From Macrostomum lignano (lineage: Eukaryota), in assembly GCA_002269645.1 (NCBI GenBank), contig NIVC01002389.1, positions 1-64,000 of the forward strand: a DNA stretch of 64,000 bases. The letters run 5' to 3'. Positions 1 to 35,800 of the stretch are shown here, piece by piece. Every line of letters begins with the position of its first letter. Positions within the stretch are counted from its first letter, which is position 1. Position numbers and translations under genes: made by a program. The notes under the pieces were generated by a model, which was given only the letters and a program-made list of their open reading frames with translations, made no database searches and was not told the origin of the DNA.

Positions 1-305
1 GACTTTCTCAATGATGTGGCGCCACCGACTCTCTCAATAAGTGACGCCACCGACTCTCTCAATATTGTGGCGCACTGAATGTCTCAATATTGTGGCGCCA
101 ACGACTCTCTCAATGATGTGGCGCCACCGACTGTCTCAATATTGTGGTGCAACTGACTGTCTCAATAATATGGCGCCACCGACTGTCTCAATGTGGGCAA
201 CTCTCTCAATAATGTGGCGCCGACTCTCTTAATATTGTGGCGCCACCGACTGTCTCAATAAGTTGACGCCACTGACTGTATCAATGTGGCGCCACCGACT
301 GTCTC
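1..305. repeat. About 26-bp GTGGCGCCAC minisatellite (inverted copy of TMCO4 intron 2 array)
   Basis: Repeated gtggcgccac/ctgtctcaat units; reverse complement of 34580-34891. Confidence 0.9.
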
Positions 306-751
306 AATAATAATAATAACGGTAGCTACGAGCACTCATTCGCGCCTAGCGCGATCCAAGTTACGTAACAAGATCTGCAGCATCACCTGTTCCTCTTCAT
401 CGCCTCGTCCACCACCTCGGCCTCGCTGGCCGGATCGTTTAACAGCGCGGCAGTTTTGAGCTCCCACTCCTCCAGCGAGGCCCAGCTGATCCGCATGGCG
501 AAGGCCACGTGCTTCAGCAGGTAGCGAGCCCTGGCGTCGTAGCAGCCTTCGCGCAGTGCGACGAGCAGGAGGTCCTGCAGCACCATCTCCGGGCAGGCGC
601 GACGGACTCCTCGGTCAGCAGCGCCTCGGCGAACGGCAGCATGGAACAGTCGCCTGGCCGTGCCGAAGGATGGCGGTGGCCGAGTTGCGAATCGAATCCG
701 GCCGCTTGTGGAGCACGTCGGCCAGGAACTTCTCGCGGAATTCCTGTGGAC

Positions 752-895
752 AGGCGGGGGTGGGCGGGGGTCAGAGCGGGGAGGCGGGTGGTGGGCGGGG
801 GTCAGAGCGGCGAGGCGGGCGGTGGGCGGGGGTCAAAGCGGGGAGGCGGTGTGTGGGCGGGGGTCAGAGCGGAGAGGCGGGTGGAGGCTAGCGGG
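752..895. repeat. About 31-bp GC-rich minisatellite (inverted copy of 33990-34132)
   Basis: gggcgggggtcagagcggggaggcgggtggt units. Confidence 0.85.
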
Positions 896-1294
896 TGAGG
901 GTGAGAGTGGGGAGTAGGCTGAGAGGGCCTGTCAACTTAGCTCATAAAGAGGAGCCCGAGTAACCTATGTATACAAATGATACGTCATTCTGCTCAGTGA
1001 CACCCAGGAAGCTGGGTTTCGTGAATAAGCGATGAAAATTGGACTTGGATAGAGGAGAACAAACAAGGGGATAATTAGGGACTCCACTTCATGAGCTTAA
1101 GTTGACAGGCCCTTTCAGTAAAGAATAGTGAGATTTAGGGAAACAAATTTGGAGTTGGATGGAAATATTTGAAACTTGAGCAAGGGGAAAGAAGGGAAGA
1201 AGGAAGGGAGAAGGGGGAGATGAAGGGTAAGAAGACTGAGATAAAGAGAAGAAGGGTGATATAAAGAGGAAGAAGGGTGAGATAAAGAGGAGAG

Positions 1295-1710
1295 GGTGAA
1301 GAGATGAAGGGGCAGGGTGAAGAGATGAAGGGGCAGGGTGAAGAGATGAAGGGGCAGGGTGAAGAGATGAAGAGGCAGGGTGAAGAGATGAAGGGAGGGT
1401 GAAGAGATGAAGGGCAGGGTGAAGAGATGAAGGGGCAGGGTGAAGAGATGAAGAGGCAGGGTGAAGAGATGAAGGGGCAGGGTGAAGAGATGAAGGGGCA
1501 GGGTTAAGAGATGAAGGGGCAGGGTGAAGAGATGAAGGGGCAGGGTGAAGAGATGAAGGGGCAGGGTGAAGAGATGAAGGGGCAGGGTGAAGAGATGAAG
1601 GGGCAGGGTGAAGAGATGAAGGGCAGGGTGAAGAGATGAAGAGGCAGGGTGAAGAGATGAAGGGGCAGGGTGAAGAGATGAAGAGGCAGGGTGAAGAGAT
1701 GAAGGGGAGG
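1295..1710. repeat. 21-bp minisatellite (GGGTGAAGAGATGAAGGGGCA)n
   Basis: Tandem units; translates as a 7-aa repeat. Confidence 0.9.
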
Positions 1711-2409
1711 GTAAAGAGATTAAGGTGCAGAAAGGAGATAGAAGACACGAGATGTTCTCACTTCAGGGCTAGAAGCAGAGACCAGCAGAAAGACCCAGCC
1801 CCTGGGAACCAGAGAGCTCACTTGTGCCAGTCCTCTGGGTACAGCTGGGCCAGAGCGGTAGCAGTGAGAGAGCAGTAGGCAAAGATGCCGGCATCAGAGA
1901 GCATGCCGCTGTTGTTATTGTTGAGCCGGGCTGTCGCCTCAGCCCCGGCTCTGCTTGCAGCTTCTGCTTTGCCTCGTCTGCTGCTGCTCCTGCGGCAGCC
2001 GGCTTGCTTGCGGCGGGTTTCTTTTTAAACATTGCTTTTGCAGACTATTGAAATTTATAAAATCCAAGAAAATGAGTAGAGATTAGTTTAGACTGCCGTT
2101 CAAACGCTCCGGTGGAGAAATTGACAGCAGATTGGATTGGCTTTGCAATCTGGAGCACAAGTGGTGGAAAATTTCCTCAATAGTGGTTTGTTTTGAAAAT
2201 GAAATGCCGATAAAACAGAAACAGAACACAAATTATTCATGTCTCAGAGCGCTGCCACGCGCAGAGTTTGATAAGATAGCCAAGCAAACTGACTGAGGGG
2301 AGGGGTGTAGATCTGCAGTGCTCGGCGAGCCTAAGTGAGCATAAATTACTCACTGCCACTCTCTCCCTGTCCCTGCGGCTCGATACCTGCGCCTCAGCTA
2401 TCTCCGTCA

Positions 2410-2878
2410 CTCCCTGCCCTCCTTTCTCCTCCCTGCCCTCCTTTTCTCCTCCCTGCCCTCCATTCTCCCTCCTTGCCCTCCTTTTCTCCCTCCCTGCCCT
2501 CCTTTCTCCCTACCTGCCCTCCTTTTCTCCCTCCCTGCCTCCTTTTCTCCCTCCCTGCCCTCCTTTTCTCCCTTCCTGCCCTCCTTTCCTCCCTCCCTGC
2601 CCTCCTTTTCTCCCTCCCTGCCCTCCTTTTCTCCCTCCCTGCCCTCCTTTTCTCCTTCCTGCCCTCCTTTCCTCCCTCCCTGCCCTCCTTTCTCCCTCCT
2701 TGCCCTCCTTTCTCCCTCCTTGCTCTCCTTTTCTCACTCCCTGCTCCTTTTCTCACTCAATGCTCCTTTTCTCCCTCCCTGCCCTCCTTTTCTCCCTCAC
2801 TGCCCTCCTTTTCTCCCTCCTTGCCCTCCTTTCTCCCTACCTGCCCTCCTTTTCTCCCTCAATGCTCCCTCACTCAAT
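2410..2878. repeat. 21-bp C/T-rich minisatellite (CCCTCCTTTTCTCCCTCCCTG)n
   Basis: Tandem units; reverse complement of 31981-32460. Confidence 0.9.
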
Positions 2879-5800
2879 CACTGCATTCCCACACTGCATT
2901 GGGGAGGGGAAACACACTGCATTCAGGGGAAACACACTGCATTGAGGGGAAACACACTGCATTGGGGAGGGGAAACACACTGCATTGGGAAAAACACTGC
3001 ATTGGGGAGGAAACACACTGCATTGGGAGGGGAAACACACTGCATTGGGGAGGGGAAACACACTGCATTGGGAGGGGAAACACACTGCATTGGGGAGGGG
3101 AAACACACTGCATTGGGGAGGGGAAACACACTGCATTGGGAGGGGAAACACACTGCATTGGGGAGGGGAAACACACTGCATTGGGGAGGGGAAACACACT
3201 GCATTGGGGAGGGGAAACACACTGCATTGGGGAGGGGAAACACACTGCATTGGGGAGGGGAAACACACTGCATTGGGAGGGGAAACACACTGCATTGGGA
3301 GGGGAAACACACTGCATTGGGGAGGGGAAACACACTGCATTGGGAGGGGAAACACACTGCATTGGGGAGGGGAAACACACTGCATTGGGGAGGGGAAACA
3401 CACTGCATTGGGGAGGGGAAACACACTGCATTGGGGAGGGGAAACACACTGCATTGGGGAGGGGAAACACACTGCATTGGGGAGGGGAAACACACTGCAT
3501 TGGGGAGGGGAAACACACTGCATTGGGGAGGGGAAACACACTGCATTGGGGAGGGGAAACACACTGCATTGGGGAGGGGAAACACACTGCATTGGGGAGG
3601 GGAAACACACTGCATTGGGGAGGGGAAACACACTGCATTGGGGAGGGGAAACACACTGCATTGGGGAGGGGAAACACACTGCATTGGGGAGGGGAAACAC
3701 ACTGCATTGGGGAGGGGAAACACACTGCATTGGGGAGGGGAAACACACTGCATTGGGGAGGGGAAACACACTGCATTGGGGAGGGGAAACACACTGCATT
3801 GGGGAGGGGAAACACACTGCATTGGGGAGGGGAAACACACTGCATTGGGGAGGGGAAACACACTGCATTGGGGAGGGGAAACACACTGCATTGGGGAGGG
3901 GAAACACACTGCATTGGGGAGGGGAAACACACTGCATTGGGGAGGGGAAACACACTGCATTGGGGAGGGGAAACACACTGCATTGGGGAGGGGAAACACA
4001 CTGCATTGGGGAGGGGAAACACACTGCATTGGGGAGGGGAAACACACTGCATTGGGGAGGGGAAACACACTGCATTGGGGAGGGGAAACACACTGCATTG
4101 GGGAGGGGAAACACACTGCATTGGGGAGGGGAAACACACTGCATTGGGGAGGGGAAACACACTGCATTGGGGAGGGGAAACACACTGCATTGGGGAGGGG
4201 AAACACACTGCATTGGGGAGGGGAAACACACTGCATTGGGGAGGGGAAACACACTGCATTGGGGAGGGGAAACACACTGCATTGGGGAGGGGAAACACAC
4301 TGCATTGGGGAGGGGAAACACACTGCATTGGGAGGGGAAACACACTGCATTGGGGAGGGGAAACACACTGCATTGGGGAGGGGAAACACACTGCATTGGG
4401 GAGGGGAAACACACTGCATTGGGGAGGGGAAACACACTGCATTGGGGAGGGGAAACACACTGCATTGGGGAGGGGAAACACACTGCATTGGGGAGGGGAA
4501 ACACACTGCATTGGGGAGGGGAAACACACTGCATTGGGGAGGGGAAACACACTGCATTGGGGAGGGGAAACACACTGCATTGGGGAGGGGAAACACACTG
4601 CATTGGGGAGGGGAAACACACTGCATTGGGGAGGGGAAACACACTGCATTGGGGAGGGGAAACACACTGCATTGGGGAGGGGAAACACACTGCATTGGGG
4701 AGGGGAAACACACTGCATTGGGGAGGGGAAACACACTGCATTGGGGAGGGGAAACACACTGCATTGGGGAGGGGAAACACACTGCATTGGGGAGGGGAAA
4801 CACACTGCATTGGGGAGGGGAAACACACTGCATTGGGGAGGGGAAACACACTGCATTGGGGAGGGGAAACACACTGCATTGGGGAGGGGAAACACACTGC
4901 ATTGGGGAGGGGAAACACACTGCATTGGGGAGGGGAAACACACTGCATTGGGGAGGGGAAACACACTGCATTGGGGAGGGGAAACACACTGCATTGGGGA
5001 GGGGAAACACACTGCATTGGGGAGGGGAAACACACTGCATTGGGGAGGGGAAACACACTGCATTGGGGAGGGGAAACACACTGCATTGGGGAGGGGAAAC
5101 ACACTGCATTGGGGAGGGGAAACACACTGCATTGGGGAGGGGAAACACACTGCATTGGGGAGGGGAAACACACTGCATTGGGGAGGGGAAACACACTGCA
5201 TTGGGGAGGGGAAACACACTGCATTGGGGAGGGGAAACACACTGCATTGGGGAGGGGAAACACACTGCATTGGGGAGGGGAAACACACTGCATTGGGGAG
5301 GGGAAACACACTGCATTGGGGAGGGGAAACACACTGCATTGGGGAGGGGAAACACACTGCATTGGGGAGGGGAAACACACTGCATTGGGGAGGGGAAACA
5401 CACTGCATTGGGGAGGGGAAACACACTGCATTGGGGAGGGGAAACACACTGCATTGGGGAGGGGAAACACACTGCATTGGGGAGGGGAAACACACTGCAT
5501 TGGGGAGGGGAAACACACTGCATTGGGGAGGGGAAACACACTGCATTGGGGAGGGGAAACACACTGCATTGGGGAGGGGAAACACACTGCATTGGGGAGG
5601 GGAAACACACTGCATTGGGGAGGGGAAACACACTGCATTGGGGAGGGGAAACACACTGCATTGGGGAGGGGAAACACACTGCATTGGGGAGGGGAAACAC
5701 ACTGCATTGGGGAGGGGAAACACACTGCATTGGGGAGGGGAAACACACTGCATTGGGGAGGGGAAACACACTGCATTGGGGAGGGGAAACACACTGCATT

Positions 5801-8800
5801 GGGGAGGGGAAACACACTGCATTGGGGAGGGGAAACACACTGCATTGGGGAGGGGAAACACACTGCATTGGGGAGGGGAAACACACTGCATTGGGGAGGG
5901 GAAACACACTGCATTGGGGAGGGGAAACACACTGCATTGGGGAGGGGAAACACACTGCATTGGGGAGGGGAAACACACTGCATTGGGGAGGGGAAACACA
6001 CTGCATTGGGGAGGGGAAACACACTGCATTGGGGAGGGGAAACACACTGCATTGGGGAGGGGAAACACACTGCATTGGGGAGGGGAAACACACTGCATTG
6101 GGGAGGGGAAACACACTGCATTGGGGAGGGGAAACACACTGCATTGGGGAGGGGAAACACACTGCATTGGGGAGGGGAAACACACTGCATTGGGGAGGGG
6201 AAACACACTGCATTGGGGAGGGGAAACACACTGCATTGGGGAGGGGAAACACACTGCATTGGGGAGGGGAAACACACTGCATTGGGGAGGGGAAACACAC
6301 TGCATTGGGGAGGGGAAACACACTGCATTGGGGAGGGGAAACACACTGCATTGGGGAGGGGAAACACACTGCATTGGGGAGGGGAAACACACTGCATTGG
6401 GGAGGGGAAACACACTGCATTGGGGAGGGGAAACACACTGCATTGGGGAGGGGAAACACACTGCATTGGGGAGGGGAAACACACTGCATTGGGGAGGGGA
6501 AACACACTGCATTGGGGAGGGGAAACACACTGCATTGGGGAGGGGAAACACACTGCATTGGGGAGGGGAAACACACTGCATTGGGGAGGGGAAACACACT
6601 GCATTGGGGAGGGGAAACACACTGCATTGGGGAGGGGAAACACACTGCATTGGGGAGGGGAAACACACTGCATTGGGGAGGGGAAACACACTGCATTGGG
6701 GAGGGGAAACACACTGCATTGGGGAGGGGAAACACACTGCATTGGGGAGGGGAAACACACTGCATTGGGGAGGGGAAACACACTGCATTGGGGAGGGGAA
6801 ACACACTGCATTGGGGAGGGGAAACACACTGCATTGGGGAGGGGAAACACACTGCATTGGGGAGGGGAAACACACTGCATTGGGGAGGGGAAACACACTG
6901 CATTGGGGAGGGGAAACACACTGCATTGGGGAGGGGAAACACACTGCATTGGGGAGGGGAAACACACTGCATTGGGGAGGGGAAACACACTGCATTGGGG
7001 AGGGGAAACACACTGCATTGGGGAGGGGAAACACACTGCATTGGGGAGGGGAAACACACTGCATTGGGGAGGGGAAACACACTGCATTGGGGAGGGGAAA
7101 CACACTGCATTGGGGAGGGGAAACACACTGCATTGGGGAGGGGAAACACACTGCATTGGGGAGGGGAAACACACTGCATTGGGGAGGGGAAACACACTGC
7201 ATTGGGGAGGGGAAACACACTGCATTGGGGAGGGGAAACACACTGCATTGGGGAGGGGAAACACACTGCATTGGGGAGGGGAAACACACTGCATTGGGGA
7301 GGGGAAACACACTGCATTGGGGAGGGGAAACACACTGCATTGGGGAGGGGAAACACACTGCATTGGGGAGGGGAAACACACTGCATTGGGGAGGGGAAAC
7401 ACACTGCATTGGGGAGGGGAAACACACTGCATTGGGGAGGGGAAACACACTGCATTGGGGAGGGGAAACACACTGCATTGGGGAGGGGAAACACACTGCA
7501 TTGGGGAGGGGAAACACACTGCATTGGGGAGGGGAAACACACTGCATTGGGGAGGGGAAACACACTGCATTGGGGAGGGGAAACACACTGCATTGGGGAG
7601 GGGAAACACACTGCATTGGGGAGGGGAAACACACTGCATTGGGGAGGGGAAACACACTGCATTGGGGAGGGGAAACACACTGCATTGGGGAGGGGAAACA
7701 CACTGCATTGGGGAGGGGAAACACACTGCATTGGGGAGGGGAAACACACTGCATTGGGGAGGGGAAACACACTGCATTGGGGAGGGGAAACACACTGCAT
7801 TGGGGAGGGGAAACACACTGCATTGGGGAGGGGAAACACACTGCATTGGGGAGGGGAAACACACTGCATTGGGGAGGGGAAACACACTGCATTGGGGAGG
7901 GGAAACACACTGCATTGGGGAGGGGAAACACACTGCATTGGGGAGGGGAAACACACTGCATTGGGGAGGGGAAACACACTGCATTGGGGAGGGGAAACAC
8001 ACTGCATTGGGGAGGGGAAACACACTGCATTGGGGAGGGGAAACACACTGCATTGGGGAGGGGAAACACACTGCATTGGGGAGGGGAAACACACTGCATT
8101 GGGGAGGGGAAACACACTGCATTGGGGAGGGGAAACACACTGCATTGGGGAGGGGAAACACACTGCATTGGGGAGGGGAAACACACTGCATTGGGGAGGG
8201 GAAACACACTGCATTGGGGAGGGGAAACACACTGCATTGGGGAGGGGAAACACACTGCATTGGGGAGGGGAAACACACTGCATTGGGGAGGGGAAACACA
8301 CTGCATTGGGGAGGGGAAACACACTGCATTGGGGAGGGGAAACACACTGCATTGGGGAGGGGAAACACACTGCATTGGGGAGGGGAAACACACTGCATTG
8401 GGGAGGGGAAACACACTGCATTGGGGAGGGGAAACACACTGCATTGGGGAGGGGAAACACACTGCATTGGGGAGGGGAAACACACTGCATTGGGGAGGGG
8501 AAACACACTGCATTGGGGAGGGGAAACACACTGCATTGGGGAGGGGAAACACACTGCATTGGGGAGGGGAAACACACTGCATTGGGGAGGGGAAACACAC
8601 TGCATTGGGGAGGGGAAACACACTGCATTGGGGAGGGGAAACACACTGCATTGGGGAGGGGAAACACACTGCATTGGGGAGGGGAAACACACTGCATTGG
8701 GGAGGGGAAACACACTGCATTGGGGAGGGGAAACACACTGCATTGGGGAGGGGAAACACACTGCATTGGGGAGGGGAAACACACTGCATTGGGGAGGGGA

Positions 8801-11800
8801 AACACACTGCATTGGGGAGGGGAAACACACTGCATTGGGGAGGGGAAACACACTGCATTGGGGAGGGGAAACACACTGCATTGGGGAGGGGAAACACACT
8901 GCATTGGGGAGGGGAAACACACTGCATTGGGGAGGGGAAACACACTGCATTGGGGAGGGGAAACACACTGCATTGGGGAGGGGAAACACACTGCATTGGG
9001 GAGGGGAAACACACTGCATTGGGGAGGGGAAACACACTGCATTGGGGAGGGGAAACACACTGCATTGGGGAGGGGAAACACACTGCATTGGGGAGGGGAA
9101 ACACACTGCATTGGGGAGGGGAAACACACTGCATTGGGGAGGGGAAACACACTGCATTGGGGAGGGGAAACACACTGCATTGGGGAGGGGAAACACACTG
9201 CATTGGGGAGGGGAAACACACTGCATTGGGGAGGGGAAACACACTGCATTGGGGAGGGGAAACACACTGCATTGGGGAGGGGAAACACACTGCATTGGGG
9301 AGGGGAAACACACTGCATTGGGGAGGGGAAACACACTGCATTGGGGAGGGGAAACACACTGCATTGGGGAGGGGAAACACACTGCATTGGGGAGGGGAAA
9401 CACACTGCATTGGGGAGGGGAAACACACTGCATTGGGGAGGGGAAACACACTGCATTGGGGAGGGGAAACACACTGCATTGGGGAGGGGAAACACACTGC
9501 ATTGGGGAGGGGAAACACACTGCATTGGGGAGGGGAAACACACTGCATTGGGGAGGGGAAACACACTGCATTGGGGAGGGGAAACACACTGCATTGGGGA
9601 GGGGAAACACACTGCATTGGGGAGGGGAAACACACTGCATTGGGGAGGGGAAACACACTGCATTGGGGAGGGGAAACACACTGCATTGGGGAGGGGAAAC
9701 ACACTGCATTGGGGAGGGGAAACACACTGCATTGGGGAGGGGAAACACACTGCATTGGGGAGGGGAAACACACTGCATTGGGGAGGGGAAACACACTGCA
9801 TTGGGGAGGGGAAACACACTGCATTGGGGAGGGGAAACACACTGCATTGGGGAGGGGAAACACACTGCATTGGGGAGGGGAAACACACTGCATTGGGGAG
9901 GGGAAACACACTGCATTGGGGAGGGGAAACACACTGCATTGGGGAGGGGAAACACACTGCATTGGGGAGGGGAAACACACTGCATTGGGGAGGGGAAACA
10001 CACTGCATTGGGGAGGGGAAACACACTGCATTGGGGAGGGGAAACACACTGCATTGGGGAGGGGAAACACACTGCATTGGGGAGGGGAAACACACTGCAT
10101 TGGGGAGGGGAAACACACTGCATTGGGGAGGGGAAACACACTGCATTGGGGAGGGGAAACACACTGCATTGGGGAGGGGAAACACACTGCATTGGGGAGG
10201 GGAAACACACTGCATTGGGGAGGGGAAACACACTGCATTGGGGAGGGGAAACACACTGCATTGGGGAGGGGAAACACACTGCATTGGGGAGGGGAAACAC
10301 ACTGCATTGGGGAGGGGAAACACACTGCATTGGGGAGGGGAAACACACTGCATTGGGGAGGGGAAACACACTGCATTGGGGAGGGGAAACACACTGCATT
10401 GGGGAGGGGAAACACACTGCATTGGGGAGGGGAAACACACTGCATTGGGGAGGGGAAACACACTGCATTGGGGAGGGGAAACACACTGCATTGGGGAGGG
10501 GAAACACACTGCATTGGGGAGGGGAAACACACTGCATTGGGGAGGGGAAACACACTGCATTGGGGAGGGGAAACACACTGCATTGGGGAGGGGAAACACA
10601 CTGCATTGGGGAGGGGAAACACACTGCATTGGGGAGGGGAAACACACTGCATTGGGGAGGGGAAACACACTGCATTGGGGAGGGGAAACACACTGCATTG
10701 GGGAGGGGAAACACACTGCATTGGGGAGGGGAAACACACTGCATTGGGGAGGGGAAACACACTGCATTGGGGAGGGGAAACACACTGCATTGGGGAGGGG
10801 AAACACACTGCATTGGGGAGGGGAAACACACTGCATTGGGGAGGGGAAACACACTGCATTGGGGAGGGGAAACACACTGCATTGGGGAGGGGAAACACAC
10901 TGCATTGGGGAGGGGAAACACACTGCATTGGGGAGGGGAAACACACTGCATTGGGGAGGGGAAACACACTGCATTGGGGAGGGGAAACACACTGCATTGG
11001 GGAGGGGAAACACACTGCATTGGGGAGGGGAAACACACTGCATTGGGGAGGGGAAACACACTGCATTGGGGAGGGGAAACACACTGCATTGGGGAGGGGA
11101 AACACACTGCATTGGGGAGGGGAAACACACTGCATTGGGGAGGGGAAACACACTGCATTGGGGAGGGGAAACACACTGCATTGGGGAGGGGAAACACACT
11201 GCATTGGGGAGGGGAAACACACTGCATTGGGGAGGGGAAACACACTGCATTGGGGAGGGGAAACACACTGCATTGGGGAGGGGAAACACACTGCATTGGG
11301 GAGGGGAAACACACTGCATTGGGGAGGGGAAACACACTGCATTGGGGAGGGGAAACACACTGCATTGGGGAGGGGAAACACACTGCATTGGGGAGGGGAA
11401 ACACACTGCATTGGGGAGGGGAAACACACTGCATTGGGGAGGGGAAACACACTGCATTGGGGAGGGGAAACACACTGCATTGGGGAGGGGAAACACACTG
11501 CATTGGGGAGGGGAAACACACTGCATTGGGGAGGGGAAACACACTGCATTGGGGAGGGGAAACACACTGCATTGGGGAGGGGAAACACACTGCATTGGGG
11601 AGGGGAAACACACTGCATTGGGGAGGGGAAACACACTGCATTGGGGAGGGGAAACACACTGCATTGGGGAGGGGAAACACACTGCATTGGGGAGGGGAAA
11701 CACACTGCATTGGGGAGGGGAAACACACTGCATTGGGGAGGGGAAACACACTGCATTGGGGAGGGGAAACACACTGCATTGGGGAGGGGAAACACACTGC

Positions 11801-14800
11801 ATTGGGGAGGGGAAACACACTGCATTGGGGAGGGGAAACACACTGCATTGGGGAGGGGAAACACACTGCATTGGGGAGGGGAAACACACTGCATTGGGGA
11901 GGGGAAACACACTGCATTGGGGAGGGGAAACACACTGCATTGGGGAGGGGAAACACACTGCATTGGGAGGGGAAACACACTGCATTGGGGAGGGGAAACA
12001 CACTGCATTGGGGAGGGGAAACACACTGCATTGGGGAGGGGAAACACACTGCATTGGGGAGGGGAAACACACTGCATTGGGGAGGGGAAACACACTGCAT
12101 TGGGGAGGGGAAACACACTGCATTGGGGAGGGGAAACACACTGCATTGGGGAGGGGAAACACACTGCATTGGGGAGGGGAAACACACTGCATTGGGGAGG
12201 GGAAACACACTGCATTGGGGAGGGGAAACACACTGCATTGGGGAGGGGAAACACACTGCATTGGGGAGGGGAAACACACTGCATTGGGGAGGGGAAACAC
12301 ACTGCATTGGGGAGGGGAAACACACTGCATTGGGGAGGGGAAACACACTGCATTGGGGAGGGGAAACACACTGCATTGGGGAGGGGAAACACACTGCATT
12401 GGGGAGGGGAAACACACTGCATTGGGGAGGGGAAACACACTGCATTGGGGAGGGGAAACACACTGCATTGGGGAGGGGAAACACACTGCATTGGGGAGGG
12501 GAAACACACTGCATTGGGGAGGGGAAACACACTGCATTGGGGAGGGGAAACACACTGCATTGGGGAGGGGAAACACACTGCATTGGGGAGGGGAAACACA
12601 CTGCATTGGGGAGGGGAAACACACTGCATTGGGGAGGGGAAACACACTGCATTGGGGAGGGGAAACACACTGCATTGGGGAGGGGAAACACACTGCATTG
12701 GGGAGGGGAAACACACTGCATTGGGGAGGGGAAACACACTGCATTGGGGAGGGGAAACACACTGCATTGGGGAGGGGAAACACACTGCATTGGGGAGGGG
12801 AAACACACTGCATTGGGGAGGGGAAACACACTGCATTGGGGAGGGGAAACACACTGCATTGGGGAGGGGAAACACACTGCATTGGGGAGGGGAAACACAC
12901 TGCATTGGGGAGGGGAAACACACTGCATTGGGGAGGGGAAACACACTGCATTGGGGAGGGGAAACACACTGCATTGGGGAGGGGAAACACACTGCATTGG
13001 GGAGGGGAAACACACTGCATTGGGGAGGGGAAACACACTGCATTGGGGAGGGGAAACACACTGCATTGGGGAGGGGAAACACACTGCATTGGGGAGGGGA
13101 AACACACTGCATTGGGGAGGGGAAACACACTGCATTGGGGAGGGGAAACACACTGCATTGGGGAGGGGAAACACACTGCATTGGGGAGGGGAAACACACT
13201 GCATTGGGGAGGGGAAACACACTGCATTGGGGAGGGGAAACACACTGCATTGGGGAGGGGAAACACACTGCATTGGGGAGGGGAAACACACTGCATTGGG
13301 GAGGGGAAACACACTGCATTGGGGAGGGGAAACACACTGCATTGGGGAGGGGAAACACACTGCATTGGGGAGGGGAAACACACTGCATTGGGGAGGGGAA
13401 ACACACTGCATTGGGGAGGGGAAACACACTGCATTGGGGAGGGGAAACACACTGCATTGGGGAGGGGAAACACACTGCATTGGGGAGGGGAAACACACTG
13501 CATTGGGGAGGGGAAACACACTGCATTGGGGAGGGGAAACACACTGCATTGGGGAGGGGAAACACACTGCATTGGGGAGGGGAAACACACTGCATTGGGG
13601 AGGGGAAACACACTGCATTGGGGAGGGGAAACACACTGCATTGGGGAGGGGAAACACACTGCATTGGGGAGGGGAAACACACTGCATTGGGGAGGGGAAA
13701 CACACTGCATTGGGGAGGGGAAACACACTGCATTGGGGAGGGGAAACACACTGCATTGGGGAGGGGAAACACACTGCATTGGGGAGGGGAAACACACTGC
13801 ATTGGGGAGGGGAAACACACTGCATTGGGGAGGGGAAACACACTGCATTGGGGAGGGGAAACACACTGCATTGGGGAGGGGAAACACACTGCATTGGGGA
13901 GGGGAAACACACTGCATTGGGGAGGGGAAACACACTGCATTGGGGAGGGGAAACACACTGCATTGGGGAGGGGAAACACACTGCATTGGGGAGGGGAAAC
14001 ACACTGCATTGGGGAGGGGAAACACACTGCATTGGGGAGGGGAAACACACTGCATTGGGGAGGGGAAACACACTGCATTGGGGAGGGGAAACACACTGCA
14101 TTGGGGAGGGGAAACACACTGCATTGGGGAGGGGAAACACACTGCATTGGGGAGGGGAAACACACTGCATTGGGGAGGGGAAACACACTGCATTGGGGAG
14201 GGGAAACACACTGCATTGGGGAGGGGAAACACACTGCATTGGGGAGGGGAAACACACTGCATTGGGGAGGGGAAACACACTGCATTGGGGAGGGGAAACA
14301 CACTGCATTGGGGAGGGGAAACACACTGCATTGGGGAGGGGAAACACACTGCATTGGGGAGGGGAAACACACTGCATTGGGGAGGGGAAACACACTGCAT
14401 TGGGGAGGGGAAACACACTGCATTGGGGAGGGGAAACACACTGCATTGGGGAGGGGAAACACACTGCATTGGGGAGGGGAAACACACTGCATTGGGGAGG
14501 GGAAACACACTGCATTGGGGAGGGGAAACACACTGCATTGGGGAGGGGAAACACACTGCATTGGGGAGGGGAAACACACTGCATTGGGGAGGGGAAACAC
14601 ACTGCATTGGGGAGGGGAAACACACTGCATTGGGGAGGGGAAACACACTGCATTGGGGAGGGGAAACACACTGCATTGGGGAGGGGAAACACACTGCATT
14701 GGGGAGGGGAAACACACTGCATTGGGGAGGGGAAACACACTGCATTGGGGAGGGGAAACACACTGCATTGGGGAGGGGAAACACACTGCATTGGGGAGGG

Positions 14801-22070: not shown

Positions 22071-22143
22071 AAATTGGGAGAGGGAGATGGACAGGTATGT
22101 CATAAAATGCAGATTAAGACAGACTATACGGTAAATTTCCCAC

Positions 22144-22521: not shown

Positions 22522-22811
22522 GCATGAAGGGTAAAGCAATAAATCTAGTTTAGCTACATGCTACTGGCAGTAATATAAAAAACTAATACTTTTCAATAAA
22601 CTTCGGCCAAATACACTTTAAATAGAAATATTTTCAGTGCACTATTGAAAGTAATAAAATACGCCACGCAATAATTTTCGTCAGAATAGAAGTAAAACAC
22701 ACAGAAGCTTTGCATTTTACTGCTTAGATAATTATATAATCGGTATATTTGTTATTCATTTTAATTAGCTGTTTAAATTTGCACAGTAAAGGTGAAAACC
22801 TTTTCTAGATA

Positions 22812-23061
22812 CCCGCTGGGAAAAATTGCAGTGACGACCAGCCACGACAGTTTAGAGACGACAGCCTTGTCGATTTACTATCGATTTACAGAAATAAGTA
22901 TGATTTGTTCAACTCAGTAGTATCGTGCAAATGCGCGCTACCAAATCTGCTTCGCTGCCTGCTTTCTATCGGCCTCTGATTGGTCGACTGCCAATGGCGA
23001 CGACAGGGTGACTTGTCGTCAACTTGTCGTCAGCCTGTGGTCGCAATTTTTTCCCAGTGGG
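22812..23061. mobile_element. 250-bp MITE with CCC(A/G)CTGGG-type terminal inverted repeats (CACTA/EnSpm-like ends)
   Basis: Left TIR cccgctgggaaaaattgc and right TIR gcaattttttcccagtggg, with internal gacgac/gtcgtc subterminal repeats. No clear TSD. Confidence 0.7.
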
Positions 23062-24230
23062 TGCCGACAGAAGACAGGACAAGCGGAGAGACAAGTTTTT
23101 GAGTGAATGATAAATTCAAATAACAGTTGCACTGGTGCACAGACAGGGAATGAACTGTGGGGCTGAAAAGACGCTGAGCCGCTAATTAGGAGGCAAGCAG
23201 AGGGCAGTTAACATAGCGGGGGGTCTGCAATCGTTGCAATTATCCAAATAAAAATTATTAGTATTAAATGAATATCAAAAAGCTCCTCGACGACACAATG
23301 AAGAAATTGTAACAAACAAACAACACAGATATCGGTTAGTTAAAATAACAAGAAGGTAAATCTAAAATTAAATCTTGATTGTATAGATTTTTATAGTTGT
23401 TAATTTTATCTGAGAGAGGTCATAAATGATTTGCCAAGAAAAATTAAATTACCGCATAAAGAATGTTCATTCTCGGAGCCAGAGCTATCTCACTATCTAA
23501 TAAGCCATGCTTTATCACTACTTAAAACTAAGTAGTCTAAGTAGACTATTTATAGAGTACCCAGCTGTCATCACTTACAGGCGCTGCAGAAATAAAAAAT
23601 AAAAAGAAGAAGCAAAGCCAAACTACTTCATAAGCATAAGCGGACAGCCAAAATCATCAGAGAGTAGCAGAAATAATAAATGGAAACAGAATTCACCTTC
23701 TCTCATCAGTTACGAATAACTCGCTAAACAAAAAACAAAAACCCAATATTGTGTAAAAATAAGTTACAAAAATACCAGGCGAACGTTTCTACTTGAGTAG
23801 ACTGTCAGTAGTGTAAAGGGAAAATGTATTAAATTATGATTAAAAAAACATCAAAGACAACAACAGCGCTTAAGCGAACTGAATTATCGATAGGGCGGGC
23901 ACAAAACCAACTGTTGCAGCCATTAAAATTCGCCATTGAAAACTTTGTCGACTTATAACAAATTAAAATTGTATCGAATAATATAACACTGAAAGACGAG
24001 CAGACGAAATTACGCCACAAATATGCTTAATTATATATGTGACAAAAAATAGTGAATTAGACACGAATATTTTTGTTGTTTATATATAAGCCCGTTTGAT
24101 TATGCGTTGGACTGTAGGCAGTTAAGCAGTGTGCGCTGAACTTCAATTTTTAAACAAAAAACCCAATGCATTTATCGATTGCACACTGAGTGACGGAGCG
24201 AGCGTAAAGAACATTGTAGCTTAGGGAACT

Positions 24231-24880
24231 NNNNNNNNNNNNNNNNNNNNNNNNNNNNNNNNNNNNNNNNNNNNNNNNNNNNNNNNNNNNNNNNNNNNNN
24301 NNNNNNNNNNNNNNNNNNNNNNNNNNNNNNNNNNNNNNNNNNNNNNNNNNNNNNNNNNNNNNNNNNNNNNNNNNNNNNNNNNNNNNNNNNNNNNNNNNNN
24401 NNNNNNNNNNNNNNNNNNNNNNNNNNNNNNNNNNNNNNNNNNNNNNNNNNNNNNNNNNNNNNNNNNNNNNNNNNNNNNNNNNNNNNNNNNNNNNNNNNNN
24501 NNNNNNNNNNNNNNNNNNNNNNNNNNNNNNNNNNNNNNNNNNNNNNNNNNNNNNNNNNNNNNNNNNNNNNNNNNNNNNNNNNNNNNNNNNNNNNNNNNNN
24601 NNNNNNNNNNNNNNNNNNNNNNNNNNNNNNNNNNNNNNNNNNNNNNNNNNNNNNNNNNNNNNNNNNNNNNNNNNNNNNNNNNNNNNNNNNNNNNNNNNNN
24701 NNNNNNNNNNNNNNNNNNNNNNNNNNNNNNNNNNNNNNNNNNNNNNNNNNNNNNNNNNNNNNNNNNNNNNNNNNNNNNNNNNNNNNNNNNNNNNNNNNNN
24801 NNNNNNNNNNNNNNNNNNNNNNNNNNNNNNNNNNNNNNNNNNNNNNNNNNNNNNNNNNNNNNNNNNNNNNNNNNNNNNNN
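24231..24880. other. Assembly gap (650 N)
   Basis: Run of N. Confidence 1.
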
Positions 24881-30800: not shown

Positions 30801-31518
30801 CAGTGTGTTTCCCCTCCCCAATGCAGTGTGTTTCCCCTCCCCAATGCAGTGTGTTTCCCCTCCCCAATGCAGTGTGTTTCCCCTCCCCAATGCAGTGTGT
30901 TTCCCCTCCCCAATGCAGTGTGTTTCCCCTCCCCAATGCAGTGTGTTTCCCCTCCCCAATGCAGTGTGTTTCCCCTCCCCAATGCAGTGTGTTTCCCCTC
31001 CCCAATGCAGTGTGTTTCCCCTCCCCAATGCAGTGTGTTTCCCCTCCCCAATGCAGTGTGTTTCCCCTCCCCAATGCAGTGTGTTTCCCCTCCCCAATGC
31101 AGTGTGTTTCCCCTCCCCAATGCAGTGCCACCTCCTCAATGCAGTGTGTTTCCCCTCCCTAATGCAGTGTGTTTCCCCTCCCCAATGCAGTGTGTTTCCC
31201 CTCCCCAATGCAGTGCCACCTCCCCAATGCAGTGTGTTTCCCCTCCCCAATGCAGTGTGTTCCCCTCCCCAATGCAGTGTGTTTCCCCTCCCCAATGCAG
31301 TGTGTTTCCCCTCCCCAATGCAGTGTGTTTCCCCTCCCAATGCAGTGTGTTTCCCCTCCCCAATGCAGTGTGTTTCCCCTCCCCAATGCAGTGTGTTTCC
31401 CCTCCCCAATGCAGTGCCACCTCCTCAATGCAGTGTGTTTCCCCTCCCCAATGCAGTGCCACCTCCTCAATGCAGTGTGTTTCCCCTCCCTAATGCAGTG
31501 TGTTTCCCCTCCCCAATA
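24881..31518. repeat. 23-bp satellite in opposite orientation (TGTGTTTCCCCTCCCCAATGCAG)n, about 290 copies, truncated by the gap
   Basis: Same unit reverse-complemented; noisy near the gap; ends 11 nt before the RRP36 exon 2 acceptor. Confidence 0.99.
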
Positions 31519-31529
31519 CACTCCGGCAG

Positions 31530-31724
31530 GTGATGCAGGAGGTGCGCCGCGAGCAGGTGGAGCAGGCGGAGTGCAGCGGCCGGGTCAGCTACCTGTCCAG
31601 GGCGCAGCTGCGCGCCCGCCTGGAAGCCGCCAAAACTGCCAGCCTATCCGAGAAGGCGCGACAAAAACTGGAGAAGCGGAAAGCAGCTCGCGAGAAGAAG
31701 AGACGCCTGCCGCCGAAGTCGTGA
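31530..31724 (+). CDS. RRP36: RRP36-like, exon 2 (C-terminal 64 aa)
   Basis: Acceptor ccggcag|GTG in phase 0. VMQEVRREQVEQAECSGRVSYLSRAQLR...KRKAAREKKRRLPPKS resembles the RRP36 C-terminus (G-x-x-P/S-F/Y-L-K/S, basic tail ending in LP). AATAAA at 31797-31802. Confidence 0.75.
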   Translation: MMQEVRREQVEQAECSGRVSYLSRAQLRARLEAAKTASLSEKARQKLEKRKAAREKKRRLPPKS

Positions 31725-31899
31725 CCTCTGAGAGTCCGAGGCAGACTGGCGGGCATTTCAAGTTTAAATTTGCTTATTTATGTGTATAAACTGTTAAATA
31801 AATGCTTCAAATATTCAATTGAATCCACGGATGTACCTTTTATGTTTAATTATTTTTTAATATTTTCTGTTTCAACTTAGGATTTGTAAATATTCCTCA

Positions 31900-32460
31900 A
31901 TCAGTGGCCTGAAGGAGAAAAGAAGGAGGGGAGATGAAGCATGGAGGGAGAAAAGAGGGGAGGGAGGGAGAAAGGAGGGCATTGAGTGAGAAAAGGAGCA
32001 TTGAGGGAGAAAAGGAGGGCAGGTAGGGAGAAAAGGAGGGCAAGGAGGGAGAAAAGGAGGGCAGTGAGGGAGAAAAGGAGGGCAGGGAGGGAGAAAAGGA
32101 GCATTGAGTGAGAAAAGGAGCAGGGAGTGAGAAAAGGAGAGCAAGGAGGGAGAAAGGAGGGCAAGGAGGGAGAAAGGAGGGCAGGGAGGGAGGAAAGGAG
32201 GGCAGGAAGGGAGAAAAGGAGGGCAGGGAGGGAGAAAAGGAGGGCAGGGAGGGAGAAAAGGAGGGCAGGGAGGGAGGAAAGGAGGGCAGGAAGGGAGAAA
32301 AGGAGGGCAGGGAGGGAGAAAAGGAGGGCAGGGAGGGAGAAAAGGAGGGCAGGTAGGGAGAAAAGGAGGGCAGGGAGGGAGAAAAGGAGGGCAAGGAGGG
32401 AGAATGGAGGGCAGGGAGGGAGAAAAGGAGGGCAGGGAGGGAGAAAGGAGGGCAGGGAGT
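31900..32460. repeat. 21-bp G/A-rich minisatellite between RRP36 and TMCO4
   Basis: gggagggagaaaaggagggca units. Confidence 0.9.
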
Positions 32461-32844
32461 GACGGAGATAGCTGAGGCGCAGGTATCGAGCCGCAGCGGA
32501 CAGGGAGAGAGTGGGCAGTGCTGAGTAATTTATGCTCACTTAGGCTCGCCCGAGCACTGCAGATCTACACCCCTCCCCTCAGTCAGTTTGCTTGGCTATC
32601 TTATCAAACTCTGGCGCGTGGCAGCGCTCTGAGACATGAATAATTTGTGTTCTGTTTCTGTTTTATCGGCATTTCATTTTCAAAACAAACCACTATTGAG
32701 GAAATTTTCCACCACTTGTGCTCATGATTGCAAAGCCAATCCAATCTGCCTGTCAATTTCTCCACCGGAGCGTTTGAACGGCAGTCTAAACTAATCTCTA
32801 CTCATTTTCTTGGATTTTATAAATTTCAATAGTCTGCAAAAGCA

Positions 32845-35800
32845 ATGTTTAAAAAGAAACCCGCCGCAAGCAAGCCGGCTGCCGCAGGAGCAGCAGCAGA
32901 CGAGGCAAAGCAGAAGCTGCAAGCAGAGCCCGGGGCTGAGGCGACAGCCCGGCTCAACAATAACAACAGCGGCATGCTCTCTGATGCCGGCATCTTTGCC
33001 TACTGCTCTCTCACTGCTACCGCTCTGGCCCAGCTGTACCCAGAGGACTGGCACAAGTGAGCTCTCTGGTTCCCAGGGGCTGGGGTCTTTCTGCTGGTCT
33101 CTGCTTCTAGCCCTGAAGTGAGAACATCTCGTGTCTTCTATCTCCTTTCTGCACCTTAATCTCTTTACCCTCCCCTTCATCTCTTCACCCTGCCTCTTCA
33201 TCTCTTCACCCTGCCCCTTCATCTCTTCACCCTGCCTCTTCATCTCTTCACCCTGCCCCTTCATCTCTTCACCCTGCCCCTTCATCTCTTCACCCTGCCC
33301 CTTCATCTCTTCACCCTGCCCCTTCATCTCTTCACCCTGCCCCTTCATCTCTTCACCCTGCCCCTTCATCTCTTAACCCTGCCCCTTCATCTCTTCACCC
33401 TGCCCCTTCATCTCTTCACCCTGCCTCTTCATCTCTTCACCCTGCCCCTTCATCTCTTCACCCTGCCCCTTCATCTCTTCACCCTCCCCTTCATCTCTTC
33501 ACCCTGCCTCTTCATCTCTTCACCCTGCCCCTTCATCTCTTCACCCTGCCCCTTCATCTCTTCACCCTGCCCCTTCATCTCTTCACCCTCTCCTCTTTAT
33601 CTCACCCTTCTTCCTCTTTATATCACCCTTCTTCCTCTTTATCTCAGTCTTCTTACCCTTCATCTCCCCCTTCTCCCTTCCTTCTTCCCTTCTTTCCCCT
33701 TGCTCAAGTTTCAAATATTTCCATCCAACTCCAAATTTGTTTCCCTAAATCTCACTATTCTTTACTGAAAGGGCCTGTCAACTTAAGCTCATGAAGTGGA
33801 GTCCCTAATTATCCCCTTGTTTGTTCTCCTCTATCCCAAGTCCAATTTTCATCGCTTATTCACGAAACCCAGCTTCCTGGGTGTCACTGAGCAGAATGAC
33901 GTATCATTTGTATACATAGGTTACTCGGGCTCCTCTTTATGAGCTAAGTTGACAGGCCCTCTCAGCCTACTCCCCACTCTCACCCTCACCCGCTAGCCTC
34001 CACCCGCCTCTCCGCTCTGACCCCCGCCCACCACCCGCCTCCCCGCTTTGACCCCCGCCCACCGCCCGCCTCGCCGCTCTGACCCCCGCCCACCACCCGC
34101 CTCCCCGCTCTGACCCCCGCCCACCACCCGCCTGTCCACAGGGAATTCCGCGAGAAGTTCCTGGCCGACGTGCTCCACAAGCGGCCGGATTCGATTCGCA
34201 ACTCGGCCACCGCCATCCTTCGGCACGGCCAGGCCGACTGTTCCATGCTGCCGTTCGCCGAGGCGCTGCTGACCGAGGAGTCCGTCCGCGCCTGCCCGGA
34301 GATGGTGCTGCAGGACCTCCTGCTCGTCGCACTGCGCGAAGGCTGCTACGACGCCAGGGCTCGCTACCTGCTGAAGCACGTGGCCTTCGCCATGCGGATC
34401 AGCTGGGCCTCGCTGGAGGAGTGGGAGCTCAAAACTGCCGCGCTGTTAAACGATCCGGCCAGCGAGGCCGAGGTGGTGGACGAGGCGATGAAGAGGAACA
34501 GGTGATGCTGCAGATCTTGTTACGTAACTTGGATCGCGCTAGGCGCGAATGAGTGCTCGTAGCTACCGTTATTATTATTATTGAGACAGTCGGTGGCGCC
34601 ACATTGATACAGTCAGTGGCGTCAACTTATTGAGACAGTCGGTGGCGCCACAATATTAAGAGAGTCGGCGCCACATTATTGAGAGAGTTGGCGCCACATT
34701 GAGACAGTCGGTGGCGCCATATTATTGAGACAGTCAGTTGCACCACAATATTGAGACAGTCGGTGGCGCCACATCATTGAGAGAGTCGTTGGCGCCACAA
34801 TATTGAGACATTCAGTGGCGCCACAATATTGAGAGAGTCGGTGGCGTCACGTTATTGAGAGAGTCGGTGGCGCCACATCATTGAGAAAGTCGGTGGCGCC
34901 ACGTTATTGAGAAAGTCGGTGGCGCCACATCATTGAGAAAGTCAATGGCGCCACATTATTGAGAGAGTCGGTGGCGCCACATCATTGAGAGAGTCGGTGG
35001 CGCCACATCATTGAGAGAGTCGGTGGCGCCACATCATTGAGAAAGGCAGTGGCGCCACAATATTGAGAGAGTCGGTGGCGCCACATCATTGAGAGAGTCG
35101 GTGGCGCCACATCATTGAGAAAGCCAGTGGCGCCACATCATTGAGAAAGGCAGTGGCGCCACGTTATTGAGAGAGTCGGTGGCGCCACACTATTGCGAGT
35201 CCGTGGCGCCAAATATTGAGACAGTCAGTGGCGCCACAATATTGAGACAGTCAGTGGCGCCACAATATTGAGACAGTCAGTGGCGCCACAATATTGAGAC
35301 AGTCAGTGGCGCCACAATATTGAGACAGTCAGTGGCGCCACAATATTGAGAGAGTCGGTGGAGCCACATCATTGAGAGAGTCGGTGGCGCCACGTTATTG
35401 AGAGAGTCAGTGGCGCCACATCATTTAGAAAGGCAGTGGCGCCACAATATTGAGAGAGTCAGTGGCACCAACTTATCGAGACAGTCAATGGCGCCACAAT
35501 ATTGAGACAGTCAGTGGCGCCACAATATTGAGAAAGTCAGTGGCGCCACAATATTGAAACAGTGGCGCCACAATATTGAGAGAGTCAGTGGCACCAACTT
35601 ATCGAGACAGTCAATGGCGCCACAATATTGAGACAGTCAGTGGCGCCACAATATTGAAACAGTCAGTGGCGCCACAATATTGAGAGAGTCAGTGGCACCA
35701 ACTTATCGAGACAGTCAATGGCGCCACAATATTGAGACAGTCAGTGGCGCCACAATATTGAGAAAGTCAGTGGCGCCACAATATTGAGACAGTCAGTGGC

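What the first reader, a model, noticed from the sequence alone, without database searches (positions are those of the whole stretch)
1..34891. RRP36 exons on opposite strands across a ~35-kb inverted duplication
Seen: exon 1 (22521-22144, minus) ends ...RDSRRQ in phase 0, and exon 2 (31530-31724, plus) starts VMQEVRR in phase 0. Joined, they give a coherent 190-aa RRP36-like protein. Neither arm holds both exons: the right arm lacks exon 1 (gap) and the left arm lacks exon 2. Inference: most likely two overlapping haplotype or paralogue contigs were scaffolded head-to-head through the satellite, and the left arm's many single-base deletions fit a low-coverage consensus. If the palindrome is real, an essential ribosome-biogenesis gene would need strand-discordant (trans-) splicing, or sits in a satellite-mediated foldback.
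Basis: partly seen in the sequence, partly recalled or inferred. Interest (0 to 1): 0.72.

Follow-up and report, generated by a model that had tools for sequence, protein, structure and literature searches.

The report
Mis-scaffolded duplicate contig splits RRP36
The two halves of this flatworm ribosome-biogenesis gene sit on opposite strands only because a short, error-rich duplicate contig was joined back-to-front across an unread gap in a draft assembly, so the gene is almost certainly an ordinary two-exon gene.

Summary
Exon 1 (22521-22144, minus) and exon 2 (31530-31724, plus) join into a 190-aa RRP36 protein. They lie in mirror-image arms built mainly from a 23-bp minisatellite.

The window is bases 1-64000 of scaffold NIVC01002389.1 of the Macrostomum lignano draft assembly Mlig_3_7 (Canu on PacBio, Pilon, SSPACE). 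The left arm is a 24.2-kb contig at the scaffold's end. It is tied to the rest only by the 650-N gap.

Each contig on its own is colinear with two paralogous loci in the same assembly. Those loci read upstream, exon 1, 0.86-0.96 kb of the same satellite, exon 2, TMCO4, all on one strand. One of them encodes the identical 190-aa protein (PAA54382.1).

The 2.9 kb of shared unique sequence differs by 28 deletion events in the left arm against 1 in the right, and by 2 substitutions. The deletions frameshift the left arm's copies of TMCO4 exons 1 and 2. This is the pattern of a poorly supported, unpolished duplicate contig.

Trans-splicing is not needed. Whether the left contig's 461-bp loss of exon 2 and its 19-kb array exist in any real molecule cannot be decided without reads.

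The parts
1..24230 (-). Contig A, a 24.2-kb contig at the very start of scaffold NIVC01002389.1. Read on the minus strand it is: RRP36 upstream, exon 1, 19.2-kb satellite, (exon 2 missing), TMCO4 exons 1-2.
   Evidence: Window coordinates equal record coordinates. The N gap starts at 24231. The contig is colinear with L002 and L001. Its left end lies in the 26-bp array at 1-311. Its right end lies about 90 bp short of where L002 has a 40-bp array.
1..2884 (-). Unique part of the left arm. It duplicates 31979-34891 and holds frameshifted copies of TMCO4 exon 1 (2032 down to about 1817) and exon 2 (about 383-720).
   Evidence: 98.7% identity. 28 deletion events here against 1 in the right arm, and 2 substitutions. 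The reading frames are broken after ...QAEPG in exon 1 and within exon 2.
2890..22068 (-). 23-bp minisatellite AATGCAGTGTGTTTCCCCTCCCC (gene orientation), 838 units. 789 of the 837 units counted are identical.
   Evidence: TRF; unit census.
22069..22143 (-). Unique 5' end of the RRP36 intron, starting with the GT donor (GTGGGAAATTTA).
   Evidence: The donor and flank are identical in L001 and L002.
22144..22521 (-). RRP36 exon 1, 126 codons from ATG to ...RDSRRQ.
   Evidence: It differs from both paralogues at two synonymous sites, exon nt 30 and 42 (window 22492 and 22480).
22522..24230 (-). AT-rich RRP36 upstream and promoter region, including a 270-bp element bounded by inverted repeats at 22801-23070.
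   Evidence: Aligns to L002 8278-10000 and to L001 944-2666.
24231..24880 (.). Assembly gap of 650 N. This is the SSPACE join between contig A and contig B.
   Evidence: Assembly method in PMC5730564.
24881..31517 (+). The same 23-bp minisatellite in gene orientation, 276 units (TRF gives 292 copies). The first units are noisy (contig end). It carries 19-bp 'GCCACCTCC' variant units and T-variant units that contig A's array lacks.
31518..31529 (+). 3' end of the intron with the AG acceptor (ATACACTCCGGCAG|).
   Evidence: The paralogues have GCACTCCCGCAG|.
31530..31724 (+). RRP36 exon 2, 64 codons plus TGA. The assembly's annotation lists it here only as a 65-aa partial protein.
   Evidence: Its nucleotide sequence is identical to exon 2 of L002.
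31725..31978 (+). RRP36 3'UTR (AATAAA at 31797-31802) and the start of the 21-bp array. Together with 31518-31724 this makes up the 461 bp absent from contig A.
31979..34891 (+). Unique part of the right arm. It is the better-quality copy of 1-2884 and holds intact TMCO4 exons 1 and 2.
   Evidence: It has no indels against L002 in the 689-bp segment tested.
32845..40572 (+). TMCO4-like gene (DUF726, annotated product 644 aa). It lies downstream of RRP36, as in both paralogous loci.

Best explanation
The strand-discordant RRP36 and the '35-kb palindrome' come from scaffolding, not from the genome.

**What the real locus looks like (inferred).** The real locus in this subgenome copy of Macrostomum lignano is most likely: upstream region, exon 1, an intron made almost wholly of a 23-bp minisatellite, exon 2, TMCO4, all on one strand and spliced in cis through the GT and AG sites.

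**How the artefact arose (partly shown, partly inferred).**
- Canu broke the PacBio assembly inside the tandem arrays.
- Contig B (24881 onward) starts in the intronic array and carries exon 2 and TMCO4.
- Contig A (1-24230) is a short, poorly supported second representation of the same locus. It carries the only copy of exon 1 and the upstream region, a homogenised 19-kb array, and 2.9 kb of the TMCO4 5' region.
- Contig A overlaps contig B rather than abutting it.
- SSPACE then attached A to B's satellite end in inverted orientation across an estimated 650-N gap.

**Shown:** the provenance of the window, the gap-only join, the colinearity of each contig with the paralogues, and the error signature.

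**Inferred:** that the join is wrong, and why SSPACE made it. Read pairs landing in repeated or duplicated sequence are the likely cause.
For: 1. The window is positions 1-64000 of NIVC01002389.1 in GCA_002269645.1, so the left arm ends where the scaffold ends.
2. The assembly was made with Canu 1.4 on PacBio reads, then Pilon, then SSPACE with read pairs. N gaps are therefore SSPACE joins of estimated size (PMC5730564).
3. Two paralogous loci in the same assembly are colinear on one strand. In L002 the exons are at 10001-10378 and 11240-11434, and in L001 at 2667-3044 and 4005-4199. Both have identical GT and AG junctions, 34-40 units of the same satellite in the intron, and DUF726 downstream.
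4. PAA54382.1 at L002 is 100% identical to the joined window protein.
5. Contig A read backwards, and contig B read forwards, each align colinearly with those loci.
6. The arms differ by 2 substitutions in 2884 bp. The paralogues differ by about 1.6% in the same segment.
7. There are 28 deletion events in A against 1 in B. They are absent from L002 as well, so they are specific to A. 23 of the 27 single-base deletions lie in runs of the same base.
8. These deletions frameshift A's copies of TMCO4 exons 1 and 2.
9. PMC10733133 reports three subgenomes in this assembly and says many 4-copy blocks have only 3-fold read coverage, which it reads as excess representation. The window, L001 and L002 account for the three copies. 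Contig A's arm is a fourth.
Against: - No reads, Hi-C or optical map could be examined, so the join itself is not directly disproved.
- Contig A is not a plain noisy copy of B. It lacks 461 bp that include exon 2. Its array lacks B's variant units. At one 2-bp site it agrees with L002 rather than with B. It may therefore come from a real allele or a rare structural variant rather than from the same molecules as B.
- The true neighbour of contig A's upstream end is expected to be a third copy of the alsin-like gene seen upstream in L002. I could not locate it.
Confidence: 0.88

Rival explanations
1. Contig A is a real second allele or a rare structural variant of this locus. It would carry an expanded, homogeneous 19-kb intronic array and a 461-bp deletion that removes exon 2. 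It was assembled from few reads and is still wrongly oriented by the scaffolder. In this reading there is no palindrome, but one genuinely broken RRP36 copy exists in the pooled worms.
For: - The array composition differs from B: none of B's V/T variant units appear among A's 838 units.
- The breakpoint is clean and joins the satellite to the 21-bp array.
- A 2-bp difference exists at which A matches L002.
- DV1 is karyotypically polymorphic, and its S subgenome is diploid.
Against: - The error rate of about 1.1% single-base deletions points to support from very few reads, not a full allele's share of 130x PacBio coverage.
- Read correction and consensus in long satellites can homogenise units and create false junctions. 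This rests on my own knowledge and was not tested here.
- Exon 1 and the upstream region exist only once for this subgenome copy.
Confidence: 0.3
2. The inverted duplication is real. A foldback or palindrome formed at the expanded minisatellite in one subgenome copy, disrupted that RRP36 copy, and left it a pseudogene. The other two copies supply the function.
For: - The scaffold as deposited shows this arrangement.
- The genome is a repeat-rich neopolyploid with unstable chromosomes.
- Loss of one of three copies would be tolerated.
Against: - The only link between the arms is an N gap.
- The arms are strongly asymmetric: 19.2 against 6.6 kb of array, different variant units, and the 461-bp loss.
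- The duplication stops exactly at the scaffold end.
- The differences between the arms look like sequencing errors, not divergence.
- A 650-bp gap cannot hold the 2.2 kb of upstream region plus exon 1 that a symmetric palindrome would need.
Confidence: 0.05
3. The palindrome is real and RRP36 from this locus is made by joining transcripts from opposite strands by trans-splicing.
For: - Both exons keep intact frames and canonical GT and AG sites.
- M. lignano has active spliced-leader trans-splicing machinery (PMC8629364, listed; abstract only).
Against: - Everything listed against a real palindrome applies here too.
- Intact frames are equally expected for a normal cis gene.
- The identical protein is encoded in cis at L002, so no transcript or protein evidence requires this.
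- The assembly's own annotation places only a 65-aa fragment here.
Confidence: 0.01
4. A simple inversion of the segment holding the upstream region, exon 1 and part of the array.
For: 2890-31517 taken alone would fit an inversion with one breakpoint in the array.
Against: Left of the inverted array lies a second copy of the TMCO4 5' region (1-2884), not the sequence that lies upstream of RRP36 in the paralogues. The structure is a duplication, not an inversion.
Confidence: 0.01

Closest known systems
False duplications and mis-oriented redundant contigs in long-read draft assemblies of polyploid or heterozygous genomes. For this assembly, PMC10733133 describes 'excessive representation of paralogous regions'. 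The general phenomenon rests on my own knowledge.
   Same: - A short terminal contig duplicates the neighbouring sequence.
- It is joined only through Ns.
- It is bounded by tandem repeats at both ends.
- Its differences from the better copy are one-directional indel errors.
- It gives a fourth copy where three subgenomes are expected.
   Different: The duplicate contig also carries the only copy of exon 1, so the error splits a gene across strands instead of simply duplicating it. The contig also has a 461-bp loss and a differently composed array.
Palindromic chimeric reads from PacBio libraries (missed adapter) that produce foldback contigs (my own knowledge).
   Same: Inverted repeat arms of near-identical sequence in a PacBio CLR assembly.
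   Different: Such reads give arms that are symmetric about one point within a single contig. Here the centre is an N gap between two contigs and the arms are asymmetric. This mechanism is not the best fit.
Strand-discordant trans-splicing, as at Drosophila mod(mdg4) (my own knowledge).
   Same: Exons of one protein lie on opposite DNA strands in the deposited sequence.
   Different: In mod(mdg4) the arrangement is backed by continuous sequence and by transcripts. Here it rests on a scaffold gap, and cis-colinear paralogues encode the same protein.
RRP36 family (Pfam PF06102), a component of small-subunit ribosome biogenesis.
   Same: Full-length domain match at E=1e-17. The two exons cover complementary parts of the profile.
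   Different: Nothing unusual in the protein. The intron is filled by a minisatellite that is much longer in this copy than in the paralogues.

Membership tests
RRP36 (PF06102) | Domain match above Pfam's gathering score. | tested here: met
   65.1 bits against a cut-off of 27.1, E=1e-17, residues 11-184 on profile positions 3-162 of 165.
RRP36 (PF06102) | The two pieces are consecutive parts of one domain and are joined by canonical splice sites. | tested here: met
   Exon 1 covers profile 3-102 and exon 2 covers 105-162. GT donor and AG acceptor are present. The same junction is used in PAA54382.1 and PAA45871.1.
Assembly artefact: redundant contig joined in the wrong orientation | The unusual arrangement depends only on a scaffold gap, not on read-through sequence. 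| tested here: met
   The single N run 24231-24880 separates the arms. The assembly was scaffolded with SSPACE.
Assembly artefact: redundant contig joined in the wrong orientation | Each contig alone agrees with the normal gene order seen elsewhere. | tested here: met
   Contig A reversed, and contig B, are each colinear with L001 and L002.
Assembly artefact: redundant contig joined in the wrong orientation | The copies differ by technical errors rather than by divergence. | tested here: met
   28 against 1 deletion events and 2 substitutions. 23 of 27 single-base deletions lie in homopolymer runs. They are absent from L002 and frameshift the TMCO4 exons.
Assembly artefact: redundant contig joined in the wrong orientation | Read depth of the duplicated arms is halved or collapsed, and no long read spans the join. 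| not testable with these tools
   No reads are available. SRX1063031 (the PacBio data named in PMC5730564) would have to be mapped.
Genuine palindrome or foldback duplication | Arms symmetric about a centre, with continuous sequence through it. | tested here: not met
   Arrays of 19.2 against 6.6 kb with different variant units. 461 bp are missing from one arm. The centre is an N gap too small for a second copy of exon 1 plus the upstream region.
Strand-discordant trans-spliced gene | No cis-encoded source of the mature mRNA or protein. | tested here: not met
   The identical 190-aa protein is encoded in cis at L002, and a 99% identical one at L001.
Strand-discordant trans-spliced gene | Transcripts that join exons from this copy specifically. 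| not testable with these tools
   This needs RNA-seq reads carrying the copy-specific exon 1 variants found.
TMCO4 / DUF726 (PF05277), the neighbouring gene | Domain match above the gathering score. | tested here: met
   Three exon ORFs cover profile positions 4-342 of 343, with E=1e-31 to 1e-38. A 644-aa product is annotated.

The most novel reading that the evidence does not exclude
Contig A and its join reflect a real molecule. In this reading, one subgenome copy of a karyotypically unstable neopolyploid flatworm holds a foldback or inverted duplication that began in a massively expanded intronic minisatellite, and this inactivated one of three copies of an essential ribosome-biogenesis gene. 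Trans-splicing would still not be needed.
Probability: 0.05. Interest if true: 0.4.

Novelty: not a real feature. Interest (0 to 1): 0.07.

Why it matters
Mainly as quality control. Anyone using Mlig_3_7 would see a truncated 65-aa RRP36 fragment here, an apparent 35-kb palindrome, and a false extra copy of the TMCO4 5' exons. These should not be read as gene loss, gene gain or exotic splicing.

The one piece of likely real biology is modest. The single RRP36 intron is a 23-bp minisatellite whose unit resembles a 3' splice site. It is at least 8 times longer in this subgenome copy (at least 6.6 kb) than in the other two (about 0.8-0.9 kb). This shows how fast tandem arrays change between the subgenomes of this species.

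Tried and rejected
- **Neighbour test, failed.** L002 has an alsin-like gene (RCC1/VPS9) and a 40-bp array upstream of RRP36. I tried to find the third copy of that gene, to see whether it sits at another contig end that should abut contig A. Two protein searches with its C-terminal exons returned nothing, although a 1779-aa product is annotated there.
- **Simple inversion, rejected.** 1-2884 duplicates the TMCO4 side, not the alsin side.
- **Missed-adapter palindromic read, not favoured.** The centre is a gap between two contigs, and the arms are asymmetric.
- **Overlap between the two arrays, none found.** B's variant units (19-mers with GCCACCTCC, and T units) never occur in A. The arrays cannot be merged, and the true array length is unknown.
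- **Quality of contig A's centre, uninformative.** I compared single-base indels against the paralogues to judge the quality of the central region. The indels were symmetric.
- **One tool error.** One search failed because the region was given on the wrong strand. One search replaced it.

Full report
**Provenance and the gap.** The window has one N run, 24231-24880, 650 bases. A search with the joined protein found only Macrostomum lignano proteins. The 65-aa protein encoded by exon 2 is on record on NIVC01002389.1 of GCA_002269645.1 (assembly Mlig_3_7) at record positions 31527-31724. These equal the window coordinates, so window base 1 is scaffold base 1. Mlig_3_7 was built from PacBio reads with Canu 1.4, polished with Pilon using Illumina and RNA-seq data, and scaffolded with SSPACE using read pairs (PMC5730564). 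The gap is therefore an SSPACE join of estimated size between a terminal 24,230-bp contig (A) and the next contig (B).

The letters on the two sides of the gap are not continuous. A ends in the distal RRP36 upstream region read backwards, equivalent to L002:8278. B begins inside the intronic satellite on the other strand. Nothing is in frame across the gap.

Exon 1 (22521-22144, minus) gives 126 aa ending RDSRRQ and is followed by CAG|GTGGGA. Exon 2 (31530-31724, plus) is preceded by CCGGCAG| and gives VMQEV...PPKS and a stop, with AATAAA at 31797-31802. The joined 190 aa match Pfam RRP36 at E=1e-17, with exon 1 on profile positions 3-102 and exon 2 on 105-162. Each exon is present once in the window.

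**Anatomy of the arms.**
- 1-2884 is the reverse complement of 31979-34891 at 98.7% identity.
- Inside those segments lie mirror-image arrays of a 23-bp unit, AATGCAGTGTGTTTCCCCTCCCC.
  - 2890-22068 holds 838 units. Of the 837 counted, 789 are identical.
  - 24881-31517 holds 276 units (TRF gives 292 copies). It starts with noisy units and carries recurring 19-bp variant units and T-variant units that the left array lacks.
- The left arm joins the satellite directly to the 21-bp array and lacks 31518-31978. That is 461 bp: the acceptor, exon 2 and the 3'UTR.
- So only 2.9 kb of unique sequence is duplicated, and the arms are far from symmetric.

**Nature of the differences.**
- In the shared 2.9 kb there are 28 deletion events in the left arm, 1 in the right, and 2 adjacent substitutions. 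Of the 27 single-base deletions, 23 lie in runs of the same base and 24 remove a G or a C. By my arithmetic the two-sided binomial p is about 1e-7.
- In a 689-bp segment, contig A has 8 gap events against both contig B and paralogue L002. B has none against L002. The deletions are therefore specific to A.
- The deletions frameshift A's copies of TMCO4 exon 1 (after ...QAEPG) and exon 2.
- Substitution divergence between A and B is 2 in 2884. In the same segment B differs from L002 by about 1.6%.
- A's arm is therefore the same subgenome copy as B, seen through a poor consensus.

**What the gene normally looks like.** The same assembly holds two paralogous loci.
- At L002 (NIVC01002921.1) the exons lie at 10001-10378 and 11240-11434 on one strand, separated by an 861-bp intron with 34 units of the same satellite. 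An alsin-like gene lies upstream and DUF726/TMCO4 downstream. The annotated product PAA54382.1 is identical to the joined window protein.
- At L001 (NIVC01005261.1) the exons lie at 2667-3044 and 4005-4199, with about 40 satellite units between them. The product is PAA45871.1, 99% identical.
- The donor and acceptor flanks are the same in all three copies.
- Contig A reversed aligns colinearly with these loci: upstream, exon 1, array, 21-bp array, TMCO4 5' region. Contig B does too: array, exon 2, TMCO4 and beyond to 41 kb.
- The window's exon 1 differs from both paralogues at two synonymous sites, so it is the third copy and not a stray piece of L001 or L002.
- PMC10733133 reports that this assembly consists mostly of three-copy blocks (subgenomes S, L1 and L2, about 1.4-1.6% apart). 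It also reports that many four-copy blocks have only three-fold read coverage, which it reads as excess representation. The window, L001 and L002 are the three copies. Contig A's arm is a fourth.

**Best explanation (confidence 0.88).** The real locus is an ordinary two-exon gene spliced in cis, whose intron is a long minisatellite. Canu broke the assembly in tandem arrays. Both ends of contig A and the start of contig B lie in or next to arrays. Contig A overlaps contig B rather than abutting it, and SSPACE joined them head-to-head.

The provenance, the gap-only join, the colinearity and the error signature are shown. That the join is false is inferred. So is the likely cause, ambiguous or mis-oriented read pairs in repeated sequence.

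One detail fits this view but does not discriminate. The unique centre of A, including exon 1, is clean, while its duplicated arm is not. That is expected if short reads used for polishing preferred the better copy in B.

**What stays open.** Contig A is not just a noisy copy of B. It has the 461-bp loss, a differently composed and very homogeneous 19-kb array, and one 2-bp site where it agrees with L002. It may derive from a real allele or a rare variant in the pooled worms (rival, 0.3; compatible with the scaffolding error). Or these features may come from read correction and consensus in a satellite. The true array length is unknown, beyond being at least 6.6 kb.

**Other rivals.**
- A genuine palindrome (0.05) is disfavoured by the asymmetry, by the gap being too small for a second exon 1 plus upstream region, and by the arm ending exactly at the scaffold end.
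- Trans-splicing (0.01) is unnecessary, because the identical protein is encoded in cis.
- A simple inversion is contradicted by 1-2884.

**Comparison with what is known.** The case matches the known class of false duplications and misjoins in draft long-read assemblies of repeat-rich polyploids. It only superficially resembles strand-discordant trans-spliced genes such as Drosophila mod(mdg4) (my own knowledge). It does not fit a missed-adapter palindromic read. The protein is a plain RRP36 family member. The finding is therefore not a real genomic feature, and interest is low.

**What could not be done.** No reads, Hi-C or other assemblies of this species were reachable. The attempt to locate the true upstream neighbour, a third copy of the alsin-like gene, failed.

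Noticed in passing
window 2890-22068 and 24881-31529; L001 3117-3995; L002 10451-11230: The only RRP36 intron is almost pure 23-bp minisatellite. Each unit (TTTCCCCTCCCCAATGCAG) looks like a pyrimidine tract plus CAG acceptor, and the last unit runs into the real acceptor. The paralogues have 34-40 units. This copy has at least 276 units (contig B) and 838 in contig A. The array seems to have grown from the 3' splice-site region and offers hundreds of cryptic acceptors.
   Followed up: partly
window 2151-2152 versus 32724-32725: This is the only substitution-type difference between the arms: TG in contig A against AT (reverse complement) in contig B. Contig A's state agrees with paralogue L002. 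Either it is a real variant or contig B was mis-polished with reads from a paralogue.
   Followed up: partly
window 22801-23070 (minus): A 270-bp element bounded by inverted repeats (…CACTGGGAAAAAATTGC … GCAATTTTTCCCAGCGGG…) lies about 300-550 bp upstream of the RRP36 start codon. It is present at the same place in all three paralogous loci (92-98% identity), so it predates the subgenome split. It could be a MITE-like insertion or a promoter element.
   Followed up: partly
window 32460-54800 and the matching parts of L001 and L002: The TMCO4 introns and flanks are packed with minisatellites of period 21-48 bp, for example 34579-35982, 36508-38211, 44552-46146 and 49413-50331. The same arrays occur in the same order in the paralogous loci but with different copy numbers.
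   Followed up: no
window 55259-61981 (minus): A tandem cluster of small genes encoding a signal-peptide-like N-terminus plus WSC domains (E=5e-16 and 6e-14), with PAN/apple-domain exons alongside (E=1e-7). At least three or four repeats of the unit are present.
   Followed up: partly
window 48860-49369 (minus): An ORF with a weak SAM-domain match (E=0.007, below Pfam's cut-off), followed by a long polyglutamine and histidine-rich stretch.
   Followed up: no
L002 1-7652: A 1779-aa alsin-like product (RCC1, PH, VPS9) is annotated upstream of RRP36. Two protein searches with its C-terminal exons returned no hit at all, not even itself. This is unexplained and may be a gap in the search index.
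   Followed up: partly
protein P0002 (UniRef A0A1I8FKG6, ML2 assembly): The older ML2 gene model for RRP36 is named 'Ribosome biogenesis protein NOP53'. It has a garbled N-terminus and skips part of exon 2 (…RDSRRGAGGECSG…). This looks like a mis-named and mis-predicted model in the source database.
   Followed up: no
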